Positions 39,898 to 46,325 of a stretch of DNA of 59,935 bases are shown here, in pieces. The stretch lies in assembly GCA_053919585.1 (NCBI GenBank), contig JBSSHM010000304.1. One strand, written 5' to 3'. The stretch comes from Euprymna scolopes. Taxonomy: Eukaryota. A program made the position numbers and the translations under genes. A model generated the notes under the pieces. That model was not told the DNA's origin and did not search any database. It saw only the letters and a list, made by a program, of their open reading frames with translations. The number at the start of each line of letters is the position of its first letter. The first letter of the stretch is position 1.

Positions 39898-41169
39898 ATG
39901 ATAAAAAAGCAACTATATAAATTTATACTATTAATCATTTTAATACTGTCATTTTCCATGATTAAGGCACAAGAAAGATTGGTTGAGTCTGTTGTGGCTG
40001 TGGTTAACGACAAGCCTATTTTATTGAGTGAATTTGAACAAGCTTGGCATCTGCAGGTTGCTAGCCTTGAAGGGGAAATTTCTGATGAGGAAGGATTAAA
40101 AAAACGACTCATTGAGCATTTGATTATGGTACGACTACAAAATGAGAGTGCAGAAAAAAATGGGATTCGAGTTAATGAGAGAGAGCTTAATAGTAGCATT
40201 GATGTGATTGCTAAAAATAATAATTTATCTCTAAAAGAGCTATATAGTCAAGCGGCAAGGCAAGGGTTAAGCATACAAGCATTTAGAGACAATATTCGTC
40301 AACAATTAGTGGCACAGCGACTACAACAACAATTATTTGGCAATCGTATTCAAATTAGCGATACAGAGGTTAATGAGGTGCTTGCTCGTGAGAATCAATT
40401 AAACGATCCCATGGAATATCAATTTAAGACGTTGCTTATACAACCTGATAAAAACAATAAACAAGCGTGGCAACAAGCGAAAGATACGATTGCTCAAATT
40501 CATCAAGATGTTTTATCTGGGCAATCTTTTGATGAAGCAATTGCTTTGTATTCAGATAATAGTGAGGGTTTCGGGAACAGTAATTTATTGTGGCAAGATT
40601 CCACTTCTATGCCTGATGTCTTCCATAAAGCTTTATTGAGGTTAGATAAGTCGCAACTTAGTCAACCCATCCAAACTGGAAGGGGGTATTTTTTGCTGCA
40701 ATTGATTGATAAACAATTCAAGCAAAAGATTGAGGCTTATCAATATAAATTAGAGCAAATTACCTTGCCTATTGGTAGCTATAATGAGCAGGAAATGATG
40801 CAAATAGAGGAGTATATTGAAAGAGAGTTGAATGCGAATGCTCGATCCTTTGCAGAGTTGGCTAAAAAATACTCTAAAGATCGTTATGCTACATACGGGG
40901 GGGAAACACAATGGCTCAAACCTAATGATATTGAGCCAGCTTTAGCCGCTCAATTAGGCAAGCAAGCAATAGGAAATACGTTGCATAAAATATTTTCTCA
41001 ACAGGGACGCCTGTTATATCGTTTAGTTGATAAAAAACAATATGATGCATCAGAAGAGGTAACACGCCAGCAAATCAAACAACAACTAACGTATTTCAAA
41101 GTACAATCAGAGTATCAGGAATTTTTGCGTAACTTACGGTTGCGTGCGGCAGTACAAATCAATCTTTAA
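39898..41169 (+). CDS. surA: Periplasmic chaperone/PPIase SurA
   Basis: VVAVVNDKPILLSE, SurA N-domain, two parvulin-like domains; lies upstream of pdxA-rsmA. Confidence 0.88.
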   Translation: MIKKQLYKFILLIILILSFSMIKAQERLVESVVAVVNDKPILLSEFEQAWHLQVASLEGEISDEEGLKKRLIEHLIMVRLQNESAEKNGIRVNERELNSSIDVIAKNNNLSLKELYSQAARQGLSIQAFRDNIRQQLVAQRLQQQLFGNRIQISDTEVNEVLARENQLNDPMEYQFKTLLIQPDKNNKQAWQQAKDTIAQIHQDVLSGQSFDEAIALYSDNSEGFGNSNLLWQDSTSMPDVFHKALLRLDKSQLSQPIQTGRGYFLLQLIDKQFKQKIEAYQYKLEQITLPIGSYNEQEMMQIEEYIERELNANARSFAELAKKYSKDRYATYGGETQWLKPNDIEPALAAQLGKQAIGNTLHKIFSQQGRLLYRLVDKKQYDASEEVTRQQIKQQLTYFKVQSEYQEFLRNLRLRAAVQINL

Positions 41170-41179
41170 TTTAGCGTTA

Positions 41180-42214
41180 ATGAAGCGTATAGCCATTTGT
41201 GGAGGTGAGCCTGCTGGTGTCGGTGTTGAGTTATGTTTGCGTCTTGCTAAGTGGCAGCATCATTTCTCTGATGTGGCACTTTTTGTGATTGCAGATAATC
41301 AATTACTCAAAGAGCGAGCAAAGGAATTAGGGCAGGCTATCGAAATACGTGTGATTGATAAAGCAACACTCAGTAACAGAAGTCAGTTGAATATCGTATC
41401 TAAGCAAGCAAAAGAAAACTCCCAATTACTTGTGTATCCTATTGCTATGAATAGCTCATCAATAGCTGGAGAGCTTTCAGTACAGAATGTGCCTTATGTC
41501 TTGAGTATTTTAAGCACCGCACATCAATTATGTAAGGATAAAGTTGCCGAAGGTGTGTTAACTTTACCTATTCATAAAGGTGTGATTAACACCCATTTAC
41601 AATCCTTCTCATCTGAGTTGTTTTATGGTCATACTGAGTATTTTCAGCAAGTAAATAATTGTCAAGAAGTAGTAATGATGTTGGCTTGTGAAGATCTAAG
41701 TGTAGCATTAGCCACCACGCATATTCCTCTTTCTCAAGTTGCTCAGGCGATCAATCAAGATCTAATTGAAAAGAAATTGCGGATTATCCATCAATACTAC
41801 TGTATACAAAAAAAACATGTACCAAAGATTGCAGTATTAGGGTTAAATCCACATGCTGGTGAAGGGGGATACATGGGAACAGAAGAAATTGACATCATAC
41901 AACCGGTTATTAATAAACTTCGTCAACAAGGGTTTCTTCTGAGTGATGTGATGTCTGCAGATACGGCTTTTATTCAACCCAACCTTAAAGAATTTGATTG
42001 CTTTTTTGGTATGTACCACGATCAGGTTTTACCCATTATTAAACATTTAGGTTTTCATCGTACTACTAATATTACTTTAGGACTTCCATATCCTCGTACA
42101 TCCGTTGATCATGGTACGGCACTAGATATTGCTGGAACAAATCAGGCAGATGATGGAAGTTTCCGTTACAGTATAGAAATCTTACAAAGATTACTTACAA
42201 ATGGTACAAGCTAA
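41180..42214 (+). CDS. pdxA: 4-hydroxythreonine-4-phosphate dehydrogenase
   Basis: GEPAGVG, GHTEY, GLNPHAGE, MYHDQ, RTSVDHGTA. The ATG at 41180 is a more plausible start than 41144. Confidence 0.95.
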   Translation: MKRIAICGGEPAGVGVELCLRLAKWQHHFSDVALFVIADNQLLKERAKELGQAIEIRVIDKATLSNRSQLNIVSKQAKENSQLLVYPIAMNSSSIAGELSVQNVPYVLSILSTAHQLCKDKVAEGVLTLPIHKGVINTHLQSFSSELFYGHTEYFQQVNNCQEVVMMLACEDLSVALATTHIPLSQVAQAINQDLIEKKLRIIHQYYCIQKKHVPKIAVLGLNPHAGEGGYMGTEEIDIIQPVINKLRQQGFLLSDVMSADTAFIQPNLKEFDCFFGMYHDQVLPIIKHLGFHRTTNITLGLPYPRTSVDHGTALDIAGTNQADDGSFRYSIEILQRLLTNGTS

Positions 42215-42998
42215 AAAACATTTTTCACAAAACTTTTTGCATGATAAGATAGTGATCAATCAAATTGTGCAGGCAATGAATATTCAGAAAAAAGATAAGC
42301 TATTGGAGGTTGGACCGGGAACAGGAGCATTGACAAAACAATTAAGCCTATCATGTGAAAGTTTATTGGCTTTAGAGATTGATGAGGATTTGGCAAAACT
42401 TCTCCAAGAACAATTTATTCAGCAAAGGGCTATTAGAATTCTTCATCAAGATGCCATGACCTTTTCCTACGATAAGGAGATCTCCTATCGTTTAGTGAGT
42501 AATCTGCCGTATCATCTGACGACAGCCTTAATTAGACAGTTTATTTCCGAGCGAGAACATATTATTGATATGCATTTAATGATGCAGAAAGAAGTTGCTG
42601 AGCGTTTGTTATGCAGTTATGGCAAAGCACGTGGTTGGTTGTCAGTTATCATTGAACTTTTATGTGAGGCAGAACATTTATTTGATGTGCCACCTGAGAG
42701 CTTTCAGCCAATGCCGGCAGTACAATCTTCTGTGGTGAGATTTCGGTGGAAAAAGGAAGAAAGTTATAGTGAGCAATGGCTATTATCTTTTCAAAAGTTA
42801 TTAATGCAGGCATTTTCTCAAAAAAGAAAAACTTTGTGGAATAATTTTGTGAAATCCAGATGGAAATTAAAAAAAGAAGACTGGGAAAAATTAAATATAG
42901 ATGCTTCACTGAGGGCAGAGCAACTAAGTTTAGATAAGTATGTAAAATTACATACTTACGTGATGACATTTATGGATAATGATAAAAGGTGTAATTAA
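42201..42998 (+). CDS. rsmA: 16S rRNA m6,2A dimethyltransferase
   Basis: KKHFSQNFL, EVGPGTGALT, SNLPY, MQKEVAER. Confidence 0.95.
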   Translation: MVQAKKHFSQNFLHDKIVINQIVQAMNIQKKDKLLEVGPGTGALTKQLSLSCESLLALEIDEDLAKLLQEQFIQQRAIRILHQDAMTFSYDKEISYRLVSNLPYHLTTALIRQFISEREHIIDMHLMMQKEVAERLLCSYGKARGWLSVIIELLCEAEHLFDVPPESFQPMPAVQSSVVRFRWKKEESYSEQWLLSFQKLLMQAFSQKRKTLWNNFVKSRWKLKKEDWEKLNIDASLRAEQLSLDKYVKLHTYVMTFMDNDKRCN

Positions 42999-43008
42999 AT
43001 CATGAGAT

Positions 43009-43752
43009 ATGATTTGTATGAATAATAACTATCGAATAATAAGCTTATTTTCAGGTTGTGGAGGTCTAGACTTGGGCTTTATTCGGGCAGGATTTGATGT
43101 TGTGTGGGCAAATGATTTTTTTAAGGAAGCGGTAGATACCTATAAGTTAAATATAGGCAACCATATTGTTCATGGTGATATTACTAAGATTAAAAGCTCT
43201 GAAATACCTAATGATATTGATATAGTGCTAGGTGGATTTCCTTGTCAAGGTTTTTCTATTGCCAATACCAAACGCTGCATGGAAGATCAAAGAAATTTTT
43301 TATATTTAGAGCTTATACGCTTGATAAAAGATAAAAATCCGAAGTTCTTTGTAGCAGAAAATGTTAAAGGATTATTATCCATGCATAAAGGTAAGGTTAT
43401 GGATATGATAATAAATGACTTTTGTAAACTAGGCTATGAAGTTGAATATAGATTGCTTAAAGCATCAGATTTTGGTGTGCCTCAGCATAGGGAAAGAGTC
43501 ATCATCATAGGCAATAGAATGGGATTTAAAAACCCCTTCCCTACTCCTACCCATGGGGAGAGTTCATTGTTTTGTAAGAAAATTAAACCCTATGTGAGCG
43601 TAAAAGAGGTTGTGGGACATTTATCAGCTGTACGCACAAGAGAAAAACCCTTTATGATCGATGGTAAACCTATTTATAATCATGATGCACGCACAAACGT
43701 TTCCGATAAATTTTGGGGCAGAGCGAATCGTATATGCTTTGCTGAATGGTAA
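43009..43752 (+). pseudogene. C5-cytosine DNA methyltransferase, 3'-truncated
   Basis: Motifs I (SLFSGCGG), IV (GGFPCQ), VI (ENV) and VIII (QHRERV) are present. The ORF ends shortly after entering the TRD region, and motifs IX/X are absent. Confidence 0.8.
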
Positions 43753-44311
43753 AGGCATTGGGCAACCTAATTCTTGCCCAGTTGGTTCAGATTTGTTTTT
43801 TGAAGTTGAAGATGCTTATATTCATATAGATTTAAAGACAGTTGGTGCATCGTTAGAGGGTAAAACTAATATAGGAGACTATACAAAAAACATTTTTATT
43901 GGCACTAACCAGAATAGTTATAAAGGTGAGATGATTGTCAATAGAAGGGATGATAAAGAGTATAGACATTATGCCCCAGCACTCCCTACATTCTATAATG
44001 CAGGAAAGAATGAAGAAAAGATATGCCTCACTTATTTTATTACTATTCTATATGATAAAGACAGTTTAGATATTCTTGTAATGAGTTTACTATGTATGCC
44101 AAATGGAGCATTGGAGCCTCATTATAAAACACGAGTTTTACAGGCAGGAAAAAATCTTGATAAAACACGATTTCGTTTTATCGAAACGCCAAATTTTGAA
44201 CTATTGAGTGAGGATGAGAAGAGAATAAAGGTGGTTTATTTCAATGAAAATATGGCTCACGAATATAGTAATAAATTGACTTTTTTTAAAGAGTTATTTA
44301 ACAAGCAGTAA
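43715..44311 (+). pseudogene. PD-(D/E)xK type II restriction endonuclease-like, probably 5'-truncated
   Basis: GSDLFFEVEDAYIHIDLKT resembles a PD..DxK core. It directly follows the C5 MTase, and the track's N-terminus is merely an alternate frame of the MTase. Confidence 0.55.
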
Positions 44312-44313
44312 AT

Positions 44314-44356
44314 TATGGCAACATTTGTCGTTGGTGATATTCATGGTAAATATAAG
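44314..44356 (+). repeat. Left copy of a 43-bp direct repeat (dead duplicate of the apaH start)
   Basis: TATGGCAACATTTGTCGTTGGTGATATTCATGGTAAATATAAG is identical to 45455-45497, but is followed by TAG instead of CAG. Confidence 0.95.
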
Positions 44357-44455
44357 TAGTTTTGATCAAAATAATGTTATGCTGTGGAGCATGAAAAACT
44401 TTATTAATCGTGTGTACATTCAGAAATAATGGATAAATTTTGCTGAGCATAACGA

Positions 44456-44464
44456 TGATATAAT
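44456..44464 (+). promoter_or_regulatory. Candidate extended -10 promoter of the TA cassette
   Basis: TGATATAAT, 35 nt upstream of the antitoxin ATG. Confidence 0.45.
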
Positions 44465-44499
44465 CTAAGTATTATAAAAAACTATTAAATTTTATACGG

Positions 44500-44976
44500 A
44501 TGTCTATATCAAAAATTTTGTCTATCTATCAATATATTATTGAAAATCACTCTTCAATTGATAAGATTAAAGCAATGAAATTGCCTTACATTGCTTTTGG
44601 ATTTTATGGAGCCATGCATAATAAGGATCATCTTTTTGACAATGACATTCAAGCTTGGAAACACGGACCAGTTATTCCTGATCTTTATCAACACATCAAT
44701 ACAGGGTTGCCTATTGATAATCAAGATTTGATGGTTTTAGAAACTGATGAAACTGAGTGTATTGATTTGGTGATAGAACTATATGGTAAGAAGCCCAGCT
44801 TTAAACTGGTGGATTTGACGCATCAAGCAGGCACGCCATGGCATAAAGTTTATGAGAGTGGACAAAATAATACCATTCCCAAGGAAGATGTTATCAAACA
44901 CTACTCAACAATAGTGAATAGTGCCAAATTAGCAAATAAGTTATCAAACGTATTTGAGACTTTAGCAGCACAATAA
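44500..44976 (+). CDS. Panacea (DUF4065/SocA/GepA-like) antitoxin
   Basis: KAMKLPYIA, LFDNDIQAWKHGPVIPDLY, LVDLTHQAGTPW. Confidence 0.88.
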   Translation: MSISKILSIYQYIIENHSSIDKIKAMKLPYIAFGFYGAMHNKDHLFDNDIQAWKHGPVIPDLYQHINTGLPIDNQDLMVLETDETECIDLVIELYGKKPSFKLVDLTHQAGTPWHKVYESGQNNTIPKEDVIKHYSTIVNSAKLANKLSNVFETLAAQ

Positions 44977-45440
44977 TGCTATCTAAGGAAGAAATTCAGT
45001 TAATTTTAGTTTTAGCCGAAACGTTTTTTAATCAGTTTGAAGAGTATAAAGAAGACCCTTTTCCTAAATGTTCAAGTAATGAACTAGATAAATTGTTTCA
45101 ATGTTGTGAAAGAAGTGAGAGTTTGAGCTACGATGAGGATTTGGATATATACTATAAACTTGCAAAATTAATTTACAATGTCTGTAAAGGACACTTTCTT
45201 CACAATGGGAATAAGCGAGCTGCAACATTAGTATTTATAGCTGTTGTAGTTAAAAAAGACTTAGCATATATAGAAGATTTGTTACTGTCTTCAAATGGAT
45301 TAAGAAATATGGAAAAGATTATCGATATTGTAGTGAGTATTGCAAGGAGCAATCCTAATGAAAGAGATGAAATTATAGAGAAGACAAAGAAAGACTTTCG
45401 TGCCATTTTAGAGCCACTTCATTCTACTACCTCTCATTAA
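44976..45440 (+). CDS. Doc-type Fic toxin
   Basis: GHFLHNGNKRAA (Doc-like HxxxxGNKR); 1-nt TAATG overlap with the antitoxin. Confidence 0.8.
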   Translation: MLSKEEIQLILVLAETFFNQFEEYKEDPFPKCSSNELDKLFQCCERSESLSYDEDLDIYYKLAKLIYNVCKGHFLHNGNKRAATLVFIAVVVKKDLAYIEDLLLSSNGLRNMEKIIDIVVSIARSNPNERDEIIEKTKKDFRAILEPLHSTTSH

Positions 45441-45455
45441 TAACTACAGAAGTAT

Positions 45456-46325
45456 ATGGCAACATTTGTCGTTGGTGATATTCATGGTAAATATAAGCAG
45501 TTACAAGAATTGCTTGCCTTGATTGACTTTAATCAAGATAAAGATATTTTATGGTGTACAGGTGATTTGGTTAATCGTGGTAAAAAGTCGCTTGAGGTTA
45601 TGCAGTTTTGCTTCGATCTTGGTGAGCGTTTCCTCACCGTTTTAGGTAATCATGATATTTTTTTATTAGCACTGTATCATGGTTATCAAAGCAATAAAAA
45701 AATTCCTAAATGCTTAGCAGACATTCTCCAATCTGCACAGGTTGATGATTTAATGTCATGGTTAAGCCATCAACCATTTTTTCATTATGAGAAAGAAAGT
45801 CAAGCAATTCTTGTGCATGCAGGCATTCCACCATTAAGTACATTAGAAGAATGTATACAAGCGAATAATCGATTACAAGCGTTTTTTCAATCACCTGAAC
45901 ATAGCAATGATTTAAAAGATTTTTTATGTCATCATATGATGGGTAATGAGCCGCGCTTTCCAGATGATATTGGTAGTGAGTATGATGATTATCGTTATTT
46001 CATTAATTGCTTTACTCGTATGCGTTATTGTGATTTGAAGGGGGCTCCTCGTTATGCTTTTAAGGGGAAACCCTCAAAAGCACCGTCCAAAAGAACACCA
46101 TGGTTTGCTTTGCCACAACACGGCATACTCTCTTCTCAACAGCCTAAATATTCTGCCATATTTGGGCATTGGGGAACGTTGCATAAGCAACCAATTAATT
46201 CGCCACACATCTTACATCTTGATGATGCGTGTGCATGGGGGGGGTGCTTAACAGCATTGTGTTTACAAGGATGTAAGGAAAGAGGCTATCAAGCAAAGCA
46301 ACGTTTTTCAGTCAGTTGTGCGTAA
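45456..46325 (+). CDS. apaH: Symmetrical bis(5'-nucleosyl)-tetraphosphatase
   Basis: VGDIHG, GDLVNRG, LGNHD, VHAGIPP, FTRMRY, FGHW. Confidence 0.95.
   Translation: MATFVVGDIHGKYKQLQELLALIDFNQDKDILWCTGDLVNRGKKSLEVMQFCFDLGERFLTVLGNHDIFLLALYHGYQSNKKIPKCLADILQSAQVDDLMSWLSHQPFFHYEKESQAILVHAGIPPLSTLEECIQANNRLQAFFQSPEHSNDLKDFLCHHMMGNEPRFPDDIGSEYDDYRYFINCFTRMRYCDLKGAPRYAFKGKPSKAPSKRTPWFALPQHGILSSQQPKYSAIFGHWGTLHKQPINSPHILHLDDACAWGGCLTALCLQGCKERGYQAKQRFSVSCA

What the first reader, a model, noticed from the sequence alone, without database searches (positions are those of the whole stretch)
44314..45502. Panacea-Doc TA cassette flanked by a 43-bp duplication of the apaH 5' end
Seen: 44314-44356 equals 45455-45497 (47/48 when extended). 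The left copy ends in a CAG-to-TAG stop, giving MATFVVGDIHGKYK*, and is followed at once by the palindrome TTTTGATCAAAA (44360-44371). The right copy starts intact apaH. The 1.1-kb interval holds only a promoter and a TA pair. Inference: attL/attR-like scars of a minimal non-autonomous element that integrates at the apaH start and restores the gene. It could excise as a circle of about 1.14 kb, with the TA enforcing retention. This is the best candidate here for an undescribed mobile unit.
Basis: partly seen in the sequence, partly recalled or inferred. Interest (0 to 1): 0.7.

Follow-up and report, generated by a model that had tools for sequence, protein, structure and literature searches.

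The report
Resident toxin-antitoxin pair between duplicated apaH starts
A 48-base copy of the start of the housekeeping gene apaH does sit on both sides of a toxin-antitoxin gene pair in a bacterium living with a cephalopod. Comparison with relatives suggests the pair is an old resident of this spot and the repeat a young recombination scar, so there is little sign of a new jumping element.

Summary
Bases 44314-44361 and 45455-45502 match at 47 of 48 positions, and this is the only such repeat on the 60-kb contig. They bracket a 138-bp leader and an intact Panacea (PanA) antitoxin plus Doc-fold toxin pair. The left copy is a 14-codon apaH stub ending in TAG.

The mobile-element reading is only partly supported.
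- An empty site, rsmA-12 bp-apaH, exists in relatives L011-L014.
- The same pair sits in the same slot in relative L007, but without any repeat.
- There the pair is as diverged as its neighbours: protein identity 59-61% against 59-75%, and synonymous sites saturated in both.
- So the pair looks anciently resident, while the 47/48 repeat is young.
- The repeat occurs only in the lineage that also carries a dead restriction-modification (R-M) remnant at 43009-44311.
- No tyrosine recombinase lies on the contig, and no second copy of the pair is in the assembly. The toxin subfamily was found nowhere else in public data.

Best reading (about 0.55): one recombination event stacked two addiction modules in the rsmA|apaH slot and left a long target duplication. 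This kind of event is described for R-M systems with 46-47-bp repeats.

No sequencing runs were listed, so neither the assembly nor excision could be checked. The scan also noted this stretch as s1-269015.

The parts
42201..42998 (+). rsmA/ksgA, the left border of the variable slot
   Evidence: TIGR00755 at 233 bits. It is followed by surA-pdxA-rsmA synteny in L007 and L011-L014.
43009..43752 (+). M': a 3'-truncated C5 cytosine DNA methyltransferase, part of the R-M remnant
   Evidence: PF00145 covers only profile positions 1-220 of 324. It matches aa 6-245 of the 408-aa methyltransferase of Vagococcus lutrae pAT03-a at 61% identity. It aligns to residues 3-166 of HaeIII and 12-194 of HhaI.
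43661..44311 (+). R': a 5'-truncated putative restriction endonuclease. Homology starts at 43715, out of frame with M'.
   Evidence: It is 61% identical to aa 66-255 of the 258-aa gene next to the pAT03-a methyltransferase. It has no Pfam hit. Its stop codon lies 3 nt before the stub ATG.
44314..44361 (+). Left repeat copy: an apaH pseudo-start, with a 14-codon stub at 44315-44356 and TAG at 44357-44359
   Evidence: It shares every window-specific base of the real apaH start; relatives match at only 38-43 of 48.
44360..44371 (.). 12-bp palindrome TTTTGATCAAAA at the junction; probably of no significance
   Evidence: not enriched over shuffles.
44362..44499 (+). 138-bp AT-rich leader of the TA pair, with an extended -10-like TGATATAAT at 44456-44464
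   Evidence: No similarity to rsmA, apaH or any fetched locus. No Rfam match. No site flagged by the consensus promoter scan. GC is 0.26-0.30 here.
44500..44976 (+). PanA (Panacea/SocA-domain) antitoxin, 158 aa
   Evidence: PF13274 at 52.1 bits against a cut-off of 25.7. It is 61% identical to P0122 in L007. dN/dS is 0.21.
44976..45440 (+). Doc-type (Fic/Doc) toxin, 154 aa, with motif H73-F-L-H-N-G-N-K-R81
   Evidence: PF02661 at 25.2 bits against a cut-off of 24. AF2 model pLDDT is 90.7. The best PDB folds are P1 Doc 3k33, 3dd7 and 3kh2, at probability 1.0 and TM 0.58/0.70. H73, N79, K80 and R81 are invariant across 33 relatives. dN/dS is 0.18.
45455..45502 (+). Right repeat copy: the functional apaH start
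45456..46325 (+). apaH, intact, 289 aa; the right border of the slot
   Evidence: NF001204 at 257 bits. It is 68-74% identical to P0002-P0005.

Best explanation
The gap between rsmA and apaH, where E. coli keeps apaG, is a variable slot in this small, deep gammaproteobacterial clade.
- The PanA-Doc toxin-antitoxin pair is a long-standing, selection-maintained resident of the slot. It is shared with at least one sister lineage.
- The window's lineage also acquired a type II R-M cassette there. That cassette is now dead, through one internal deletion.
- The 48-bp repeat is a young scar of the single recombination event that put the two addiction modules side by side.

There are two possible routes. 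Either the leader-TA block entered an allele in which R-M abutted apaH, or the R-M block plus the first 48 bp of apaH entered a TA-bearing allele. The join was made at apaH +48, possibly on the 4-nt microhomology AGTT. [quoted passage not shown] The evidence cannot tell these apart.

Stacking rather than replacement is what one expects when losing either module would kill the cell.

Shown here: the anatomy, the synteny, the relative ages, and the truncation of the R-M genes. Inferred: the event type, and the role of addiction.
For: - The repeat is sharp-edged and unique.
- L007 has rsmA-33 bp-PanA-Doc-43 bp-apaH and no repeat.
- Window against L007, protein identity: PanA 61%, Doc 59%; flanks 59-75%.
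- dS is at least 1.5 or uncomputable for both TA and flanks. Third-position identity is 46-50% for the TA against 39-53% for the flanks.
- The neutral left copy differs at only 1 of 48 bases and carries all window-specific bases.
- The empty site rsmA-12 bp-apaH is present in L011-L014.
- The R-M remnant is seen only in the window. Its M' and R' homologies meet out of frame at 43715-43719.
- No tyrosine recombinase is on the contig.
- R-M insertions bounded by 46-47-bp target duplications, with no mobility genes, are documented (PMC2853133).
- Chromosomal R-M systems resist allelic replacement (PMC3874152).
Against: - No strain with either parental allele was found (rsmA-M-R-apaH, or rsmA-leader-TA-apaH without the stub). 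The two-allele step is therefore inferred.
- The vertical-descent argument rests on one fully informative relative, L007. L008 adds only a 12-aa hint.
- The TA's presence at the same nucleotide-level slot in two lineages would also fit site-specific targeting.
- A second Panacea cassette, in an unrelated genome (L016), is bounded by a 37-nt repeat containing a neighbouring gene's start. This hints at a recurrent mechanism rather than a one-off event.
Confidence: 0.55

Rival explanations
1. The leader-PanA-Doc block is a non-autonomous, CIME-like integrative cassette. Its att site is the first ~48 bp of apaH, and it is moved by a recombinase encoded elsewhere. The repeats are attL and attR.
For: - The repeat brackets exactly the TA block.
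- The empty site exists in relatives.
- The TA occupies the same slot in L007.
- The apaH start is unusually conserved, at 79-90% against 70-74% for the whole gene. Conserved sequence suits an att target.
- L016 shows a comparable repeat around another Panacea cassette.
Against: - L007 has no repeat.
- The L008 contig runs from 57 bp upstream straight through the apaH start, and no 20-mer of that start recurs on the contig.
- TA divergence equals flank divergence, with saturated dS, so there has been no recent transfer between these lineages.
- No integrase is on the contig, and no other copy is in the assembly.
- The toxin subfamily is absent from GTDB genomes and JGI metagenomes, and has only one close relative among 1.8 billion representatives.
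Confidence: 0.12
2. An intrachromosomal history. The segment [leader-TA-first 48 bp of apaH] duplicated in tandem. The incoming R-M cassette, or a deletion linked to it, then removed the first leader-TA copy and left only the 48-bp stub.
For: - The start-to-start spacing of 1141 bp equals one unit.
- A tandemly duplicated Panacea cassette is seen in L016.
- R-M systems are linked to rearrangements (PMC2853133).
Against: - It needs at least two events with a coincidentally exact boundary: the R' stop codon lies 3 nt before the stub ATG.
- No trace of a first leader or TA copy remains.
Confidence: 0.1
3. An assembly artefact. The contig is a chimera of two co-existing strain alleles, one with R-M and one with TA, joined through the shared apaH start.
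For: - The contig comes from a symbiont or contaminant population inside a 5.9-Gb host assembly.
- Read support could not be examined.
- Related bacteria do co-occur in single samples: L008 and L009 come from one run.
Against: - The left junction, apaH +48 joined to the unrelated leader, is not a homologous overlap. It must exist in reads to be assembled.
- A 925-contig, 5.9-Gb assembly implies long reads, which would span 1.1 kb.
- The T/C difference between the copies argues against a collapsed or copied repeat.
Confidence: 0.08

Closest known systems
Insertion with long target duplication of restriction-modification systems (Nobusato et al. 2000; Furuta, Abe and Kobayashi 2010, PMC2853133)
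   Same: - A small addiction-type gene unit with no transposase or integrase.
- Bounded by near-identical direct repeats of more than 30 bp. Their H. influenzae cases are 46 bp and their T. thermophilus case is 47 bp; here the repeat is 48 bp.
- The repeats overlap the end of a flanking gene and are unique in the genome.
   Different: - The bracketed unit is a toxin-antitoxin pair, not R-M. I found no paper describing this for TA pairs.
- There is no same-species empty-site genome.
- Comparative data say the bracketed genes are older at the site than the repeat, so the repeat may come from the neighbouring R-M's arrival rather than the TA's.
PanA-PanT (Panacea/DUF4065) type II toxin-antitoxin systems with Fic/Doc toxins, e.g. 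the Corynebacterium doosanense pair (Kurata et al. 2022, PMC8832971)
   Same: A PanA-domain antitoxin lies upstream of a small Fic/Doc-family toxin in the same orientation. Such pairs have been validated experimentally as translation-inhibiting TA systems.
   Different: The toxin here belongs to a very small, divergent Doc branch. Only 57 representatives reach E<1e-3, and only one reaches E<1e-30. No activity was tested here.
CIMEs and other integrase-less islands bounded by att sites and mobilised in trans (from my own knowledge of the Streptococcus thermophilus ICESt literature; not checked here)
   Same: Direct repeats derived from the end of a conserved gene flank a cargo that has no recombinase. 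The gene is kept intact by the element-proximal copy.
   Different: No cognate ICE or integrase is known here. The same cargo in L007 lacks repeats. There is no evidence of movement.
Resistance of chromosomal addiction modules to allelic replacement (Handa et al. 2001, as cited in PMC3874152)
   Same: Two post-segregational-killing modules compete for one locus. Survivors keep the resident module and gain the incomer through a rearrangement or duplication.
   Different: That work is a laboratory result for R-M systems. Here it is only an inference for a natural R-M plus TA stack.

Membership tests
PanA (Panacea, PF13274) antitoxin | Panacea/SocA domain above the curated threshold | tested here: met
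   PF13274 at 52.1 bits against a cut-off of 25.7, residues 26-115. The NCBIfam SocA equivalog scores 50.7 bits, below its cut-off of 190, so the protein has the domain but is not a SocA equivalog.
PanA (Panacea, PF13274) antitoxin | Bicistronic with a downstream toxin gene | tested here: met
   The stop and start codons overlap as TAATG at 44974-44978, and this is conserved in L007.
PanA (Panacea, PF13274) antitoxin | Neutralises its cognate toxin by direct binding | not testable with these tools
   Needs co-expression and pull-down experiments.
Doc (Fic/Doc family toxin) | Fic/Doc domain match | tested here: inconclusive
   Pfam PF02661 scores 25.2 bits, just over its cut-off of 24. TIGR01550 DOC_P1 scores 31.4 bits, under its cut-off of 38.65. 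Of 33 relatives, 26 hit PF02661.
Doc (Fic/Doc family toxin) | Doc-type active-site motif H-x-F-x-(D/N)-(A/G)-N-K-R | tested here: met
   The protein has H73-F-L-H-N-G-N-K-R81, with Leu in place of the motif's Phe. H73, N79, K80 and R81 are invariant and L75, N77 and G78 are at least 90% conserved in 33 relatives. The consensus motif itself is from my own knowledge.
Doc (Fic/Doc family toxin) | Doc fold | tested here: met
   AF2 pLDDT is 90.7 and pTM 0.85. The top five Foldseek PDB hits are all P1 Doc chains, at probability 1.0, TM 0.58/0.70 and E 0.01.
Doc (Fic/Doc family toxin) | Phosphorylates EF-Tu and arrests translation | not testable with these tools
   Needs a biochemical assay.
Insertion with long target duplication (Furuta 2010 criteria) | Flanking direct repeat longer than 30 bp, high identity, unique in the genome | tested here: met
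   48 bp at 47/48, with only two copies on the contig and no other match in the assembly.
Insertion with long target duplication (Furuta 2010 criteria) | Insert under 20 kb with no mobility gene | tested here: met
   1,093 bp lie between the repeats, holding only PanA and Doc. There is no PF00589 hit on contig C223.
Insertion with long target duplication (Furuta 2010 criteria) | A closely related genome has the target once and lacks the insert | tested here: inconclusive
   The empty site is seen only in distant relatives (ApaH 69% identical). L007 has the insert but a single target. No same-species genome was available.
Insertion with long target duplication (Furuta 2010 criteria) | Insert carries R and M genes | tested here: not met
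   The insert is a TA pair. The R-M remnant lies outside the repeats.
Site-specific integrative element, or a trans-mobilised CIME-like cassette | Cognate recombinase in cis or identified in trans | tested here: not met
   There is none on the 60-kb contig. Only two PF00589 hits exist in the whole assembly, on C240 and C503, with no known link. Action in trans cannot be excluded.
Site-specific integrative element, or a trans-mobilised CIME-like cassette | The same element with att repeats at the same target in independent genomes | tested here: not met
   L007 has the orthologous TA without a repeat. The L008 contig shows no repeated apaH start.
Site-specific integrative element, or a trans-mobilised CIME-like cassette | Excised circle and empty site detectable | not testable with these tools
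   No sequencing run was listed.
Integron gene cassette | attC-type imperfect inverted repeat at the cassette's 3' end, with an integron integrase nearby | tested here: not met
   Only 14 bp separate the Doc stop codon from the right repeat. No inverted repeat was found at the borders, and no integrase.

The most novel reading that the evidence does not exclude
PanA-type TA cassettes are themselves a class of minimal, recombinase-less mobile units. They would enter genomes at conserved gene starts with 35-50-bp target duplications, and could leave as circles. The window (48 bp at apaH) and L016 (37 nt at an EamA gene start, with tandem amplification) would be two instances. This would extend Kobayashi's 'insertion with long target duplication' life cycle from R-M systems to toxin-antitoxin systems.
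Probability: 0.12. Interest if true: 0.65.

Novelty: new member of a known kind. Interest (0 to 1): 0.3.

Why it matters
If the best reading holds, the locus is a natural snapshot of two addiction modules, an R-M system and a TA pair, competing for one chromosomal slot and ending up stacked. The stub of the neighbouring gene marks the join. This supports the idea, shown in the laboratory only for R-M systems, that post-segregational killing shapes allele replacement on chromosomes.

It is also a caution for genome scans. A clean direct repeat around a TA pair is not proof of a mobile element. Here the age of the cargo, read from a syntenic relative, contradicts the age of the repeat.

The PanA-Doc pair itself adds a rare, divergent Doc branch in an almost unsampled symbiont clade.

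Tried and rejected
- Read-level test: the look-up of sequencing runs listed no run, so read laying could not be used.
- Exact-protein look-ups of ApaH and the toxin: not on record.
- Genome-contig scans with ApaH and with the Doc alignment: no relatives.
- Metagenome contigs with the Doc alignment and with a degenerate pattern for the active-site stretch: nothing.
- P0128 and P0127 contexts: not on record.
- P0126: sits at a prophage lysis-module end, so uninformative.
- The 138-bp leader as a relic of the rsmA 3' end or of apaH: rejected, no similarity.
- The palindrome as a recombination site or operator: not above chance.
- A known RNA in the leader: none in Rfam at E up to 1.
- Sequence search of the toxin profile against PDB: only noise, with Doc 9vzc at E 0.42. 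The fold search was needed to place it.
- A decayed larger duplication: rejected, because both repeat ends are sharp.

Full report
**Observation**

The repeat is real. Bases 44314-44361 and 45455-45502 match at 47 of 48 positions. The first 43 are exact, and the one mismatch is T against C at repeat position 44. It is the only long repeat of its kind on the 59,935-bp contig.

- The left copy reads ATG GCA ... AAG TAG, which is MATFVVGDIHGKYK*.
- The right copy opens an intact 289-aa ApaH (NF001204, 257 bits).
- Both ends of the repeat are sharp. The R' 3' end and the Doc 3' end upstream of the two copies are unrelated.
- The 138 bp that follow the left copy match nothing in apaH, rsmA or any fetched locus.
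- The palindrome TTTTGATCAAAA is present but is not above chance.
- The consensus promoter scan flags nothing on the + strand of the leader. A TGnTATAAT-type extended -10 is visible at 44456-44464.
- No Rfam family matches the region.

**What the genes are**

- ORF 44500-44976 is a Panacea/SocA-domain antitoxin (PF13274, 52 bits).
- ORF 44976-45440 overlaps it by TAATG and is a divergent Doc-type toxin.
  - PF02661 scores 25.2 bits, just above threshold. TIGR01550 is below its cut-off.
  - The active-site stretch is H73-F-L-H-N-G-N-K-R81, with H73, N79, K80 and R81 invariant in 33 relatives.
  - An AlphaFold model (pLDDT 90.7) has P1 Doc chains 3k33, 3dd7 and 3kh2 as its five best PDB matches (probability 1.0, TM 0.58/0.70).
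- PanA-Fic/Doc pairs are a validated TA type (PMC8832971).
- Upstream, 43009-44311 is a dead type II R-M remnant.
  - M' matches aa 6-245 of the 408-aa methyltransferase of the Vagococcus lutrae pAT03-a R-M pair. R' matches aa 66-255 of its 258-aa partner. Each is 61% identical.
  - The two homologies meet out of frame at 43715-43719.
  - One deletion therefore removed the methyltransferase's target-recognition domain and motifs IX-X, along with the first 65 residues of the nuclease.

**Origin of the contig**

The window is a whole contig (C223) of a 5.9-Gb, 925-contig eukaryote assembly. Earlier notes of this scan call the host a cephalopod (s1-268976). I did not test that. The TA, the repeat and apaH each occur once in the assembly.

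**Relatives**

Among 5.8 billion proteins, ApaH has only four clusters at 68-74% identity. The next best are at 46% or less. Their contexts are as follows.

| Locus | ApaH identity | Context of the slot |
|---|---|---|
| L011-L014 | 69% | surA-pdxA-rsmA-12 bp-apaH, an empty slot without apaG |
| L007 | 72% | rsmA-33 bp-PanA-Doc-43 bp-apaH; no R-M and no repeat |
| L008 | 74% | Contig starts 57 bp before apaH; see below |
| L009/L010 | 68% | A T2SS-F gene lies upstream of apaH |

For L008, the last 12 codons before that start resemble the Doc C-terminus. No 20-mer of its apaH start recurs on the contig.

**Age of the cargo against age of the repeat**

Window against L007:

| Measure | PanA / Doc | Flanking genes |
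|---|---|---|
| Protein identity (local alignment) | 61% / 59% | SurA 72%, PdxA 64%, RsmA 66%, ApaH 72-74% |
| dS | 1.6 / 1.9 | 1.7-2.4, or uncomputable |
| Third-codon-position identity | 46-50% | 39-53% |
| dN/dS | 0.21 / 0.18 | 0.09-0.18 where computable |

- A GHMP kinase, a further flanking gene, is 59% identical by global alignment.
- DNA identity is 66-68% across both the TA and the flanks.
- The TA has therefore diverged between these two lineages for as long as its housekeeping neighbours, and under purifying selection.
- The left repeat copy has no function to preserve it, yet it differs from the right copy at only 1 of 48 bases. It carries every window-specific base; relatives match at 38-43 of 48.
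- So the repeat is far younger than the TA's residence in this slot.
- The repeat is found only in the one lineage that also has the R-M remnant.

**Mechanism**

The simplest account needs two alleles of the slot within this lineage. In one, R-M abutted the apaH ATG; the R' stop codon lies 3 nt before the stub ATG. The other had leader-TA-apaH. A single non-homologous or short-homology join at apaH +48 then kept both modules. AGTT is a possible 4-nt microhomology after the mismatch.

I cannot tell whether the TA block entered the R-M allele or the R-M block plus the stub entered the TA allele. The first route could be a long target duplication, a Campbell-type crossover of a circularised fragment, or homology-facilitated illegitimate recombination anchored in apaH.

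- Insertions of R-M units bounded by 46-47-bp near-identical repeats that overlap gene ends, with no mobility genes, are documented (PMC2853133).
- Chromosomal R-M systems resist allelic replacement (PMC3874152).
- Stacking rather than replacement is the expected outcome when either loss is lethal. That last step is inference.

**Why not a dedicated mobile cassette?**

- No tyrosine recombinase is on the contig.
- No inverted-repeat or attC-like ends were found.
- The toxin subfamily is tiny. Only 57 representatives in 1.84 billion reach E<1e-3, and only one (L007's) reaches E<1e-30.
- It is absent from GTDB genomes and JGI metagenomes by pattern scans.

Two things keep this rival alive, at about 0.12. 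The slot is shared, and the apaH start is unusually conserved. A second Panacea cassette, in an unrelated 2.39-Mb genome (L016), is bounded by a 37-nt repeat (36/37) that contains the start codon of a neighbouring EamA gene.

An assembly chimera cannot be excluded, because no sequencing runs were listed. It is unlikely, because the left junction is not a homologous overlap.

**Verdict**

- The mobile-unit interpretation is only partly supported.
- Novelty is modest: a TA-bracketing example of a rearrangement class known for R-M systems, plus a rare Doc branch.
- Another first-stage note on the same stretch (s1-269015, 'layered defence hotspot with no mobility gene') agrees with what I found.

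Noticed in passing
window 43009-44311: A dead type II R-M remnant. The C5 methyltransferase is cut after about aa 245 of 408 and the nuclease lacks its first 65 aa. The two are joined out of frame at 43715-43719. Both are 61% identical to the R-M pair of Vagococcus lutrae plasmid pAT03-a. Both remaining ORFs are otherwise open, so the deletion looks recent.
   Followed up: yes
L016 2435-4547: In an unrelated AT-rich 2.39-Mb circular metagenome contig, 1.7 tandem copies of a Panacea plus 123-aa membrane-toxin cassette are bounded by a 37-nt direct repeat (36/37). The repeat includes the start codon of the divergent EamA gene. The right repeat cuts toxin copy 2 after 27 nt. Arrays of 32-nt operator-like repeats precede each antitoxin gene.
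   Followed up: partly
window 45455-45502; L007, L008, L009, L011 apaH starts: The first 48 nt of apaH, which encode the GDxHG metallophosphatase motif, are 79-90% identical across lineages. The whole apaH genes are only 70-74% identical.
   Followed up: partly
L007 8455-9316: apaH is split into 164-aa and 125-aa ORFs on a contig labelled 1.87x coverage. This is probably a sequencing error rather than a pseudogene.
   Followed up: no
window 39898-46325 and L011-L014: The whole clade lacks apaG between rsmA and apaH. The clade is very poorly sampled: four ApaH clusters at 68-74% identity, then none above 46%. Two members (L008, L009) come from the same run, SRR26146373.
   Followed up: partly
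G000 C240:26162-26671 and C503:127583-128092: These are the only two tyrosine-recombinase (PF00589) matches reported in the 5.9-Gb assembly. The C503 match contains three in-frame TGA codons. Whether either belongs to this bacterium is unknown.
   Followed up: no
window 42950-42998: The RsmA C-terminal tail (…YVMTFMDNDKRCN) is longer than, and unrelated to, the tails in L007 and L011. The left border of the slot has therefore also been remodelled.
   Followed up: no
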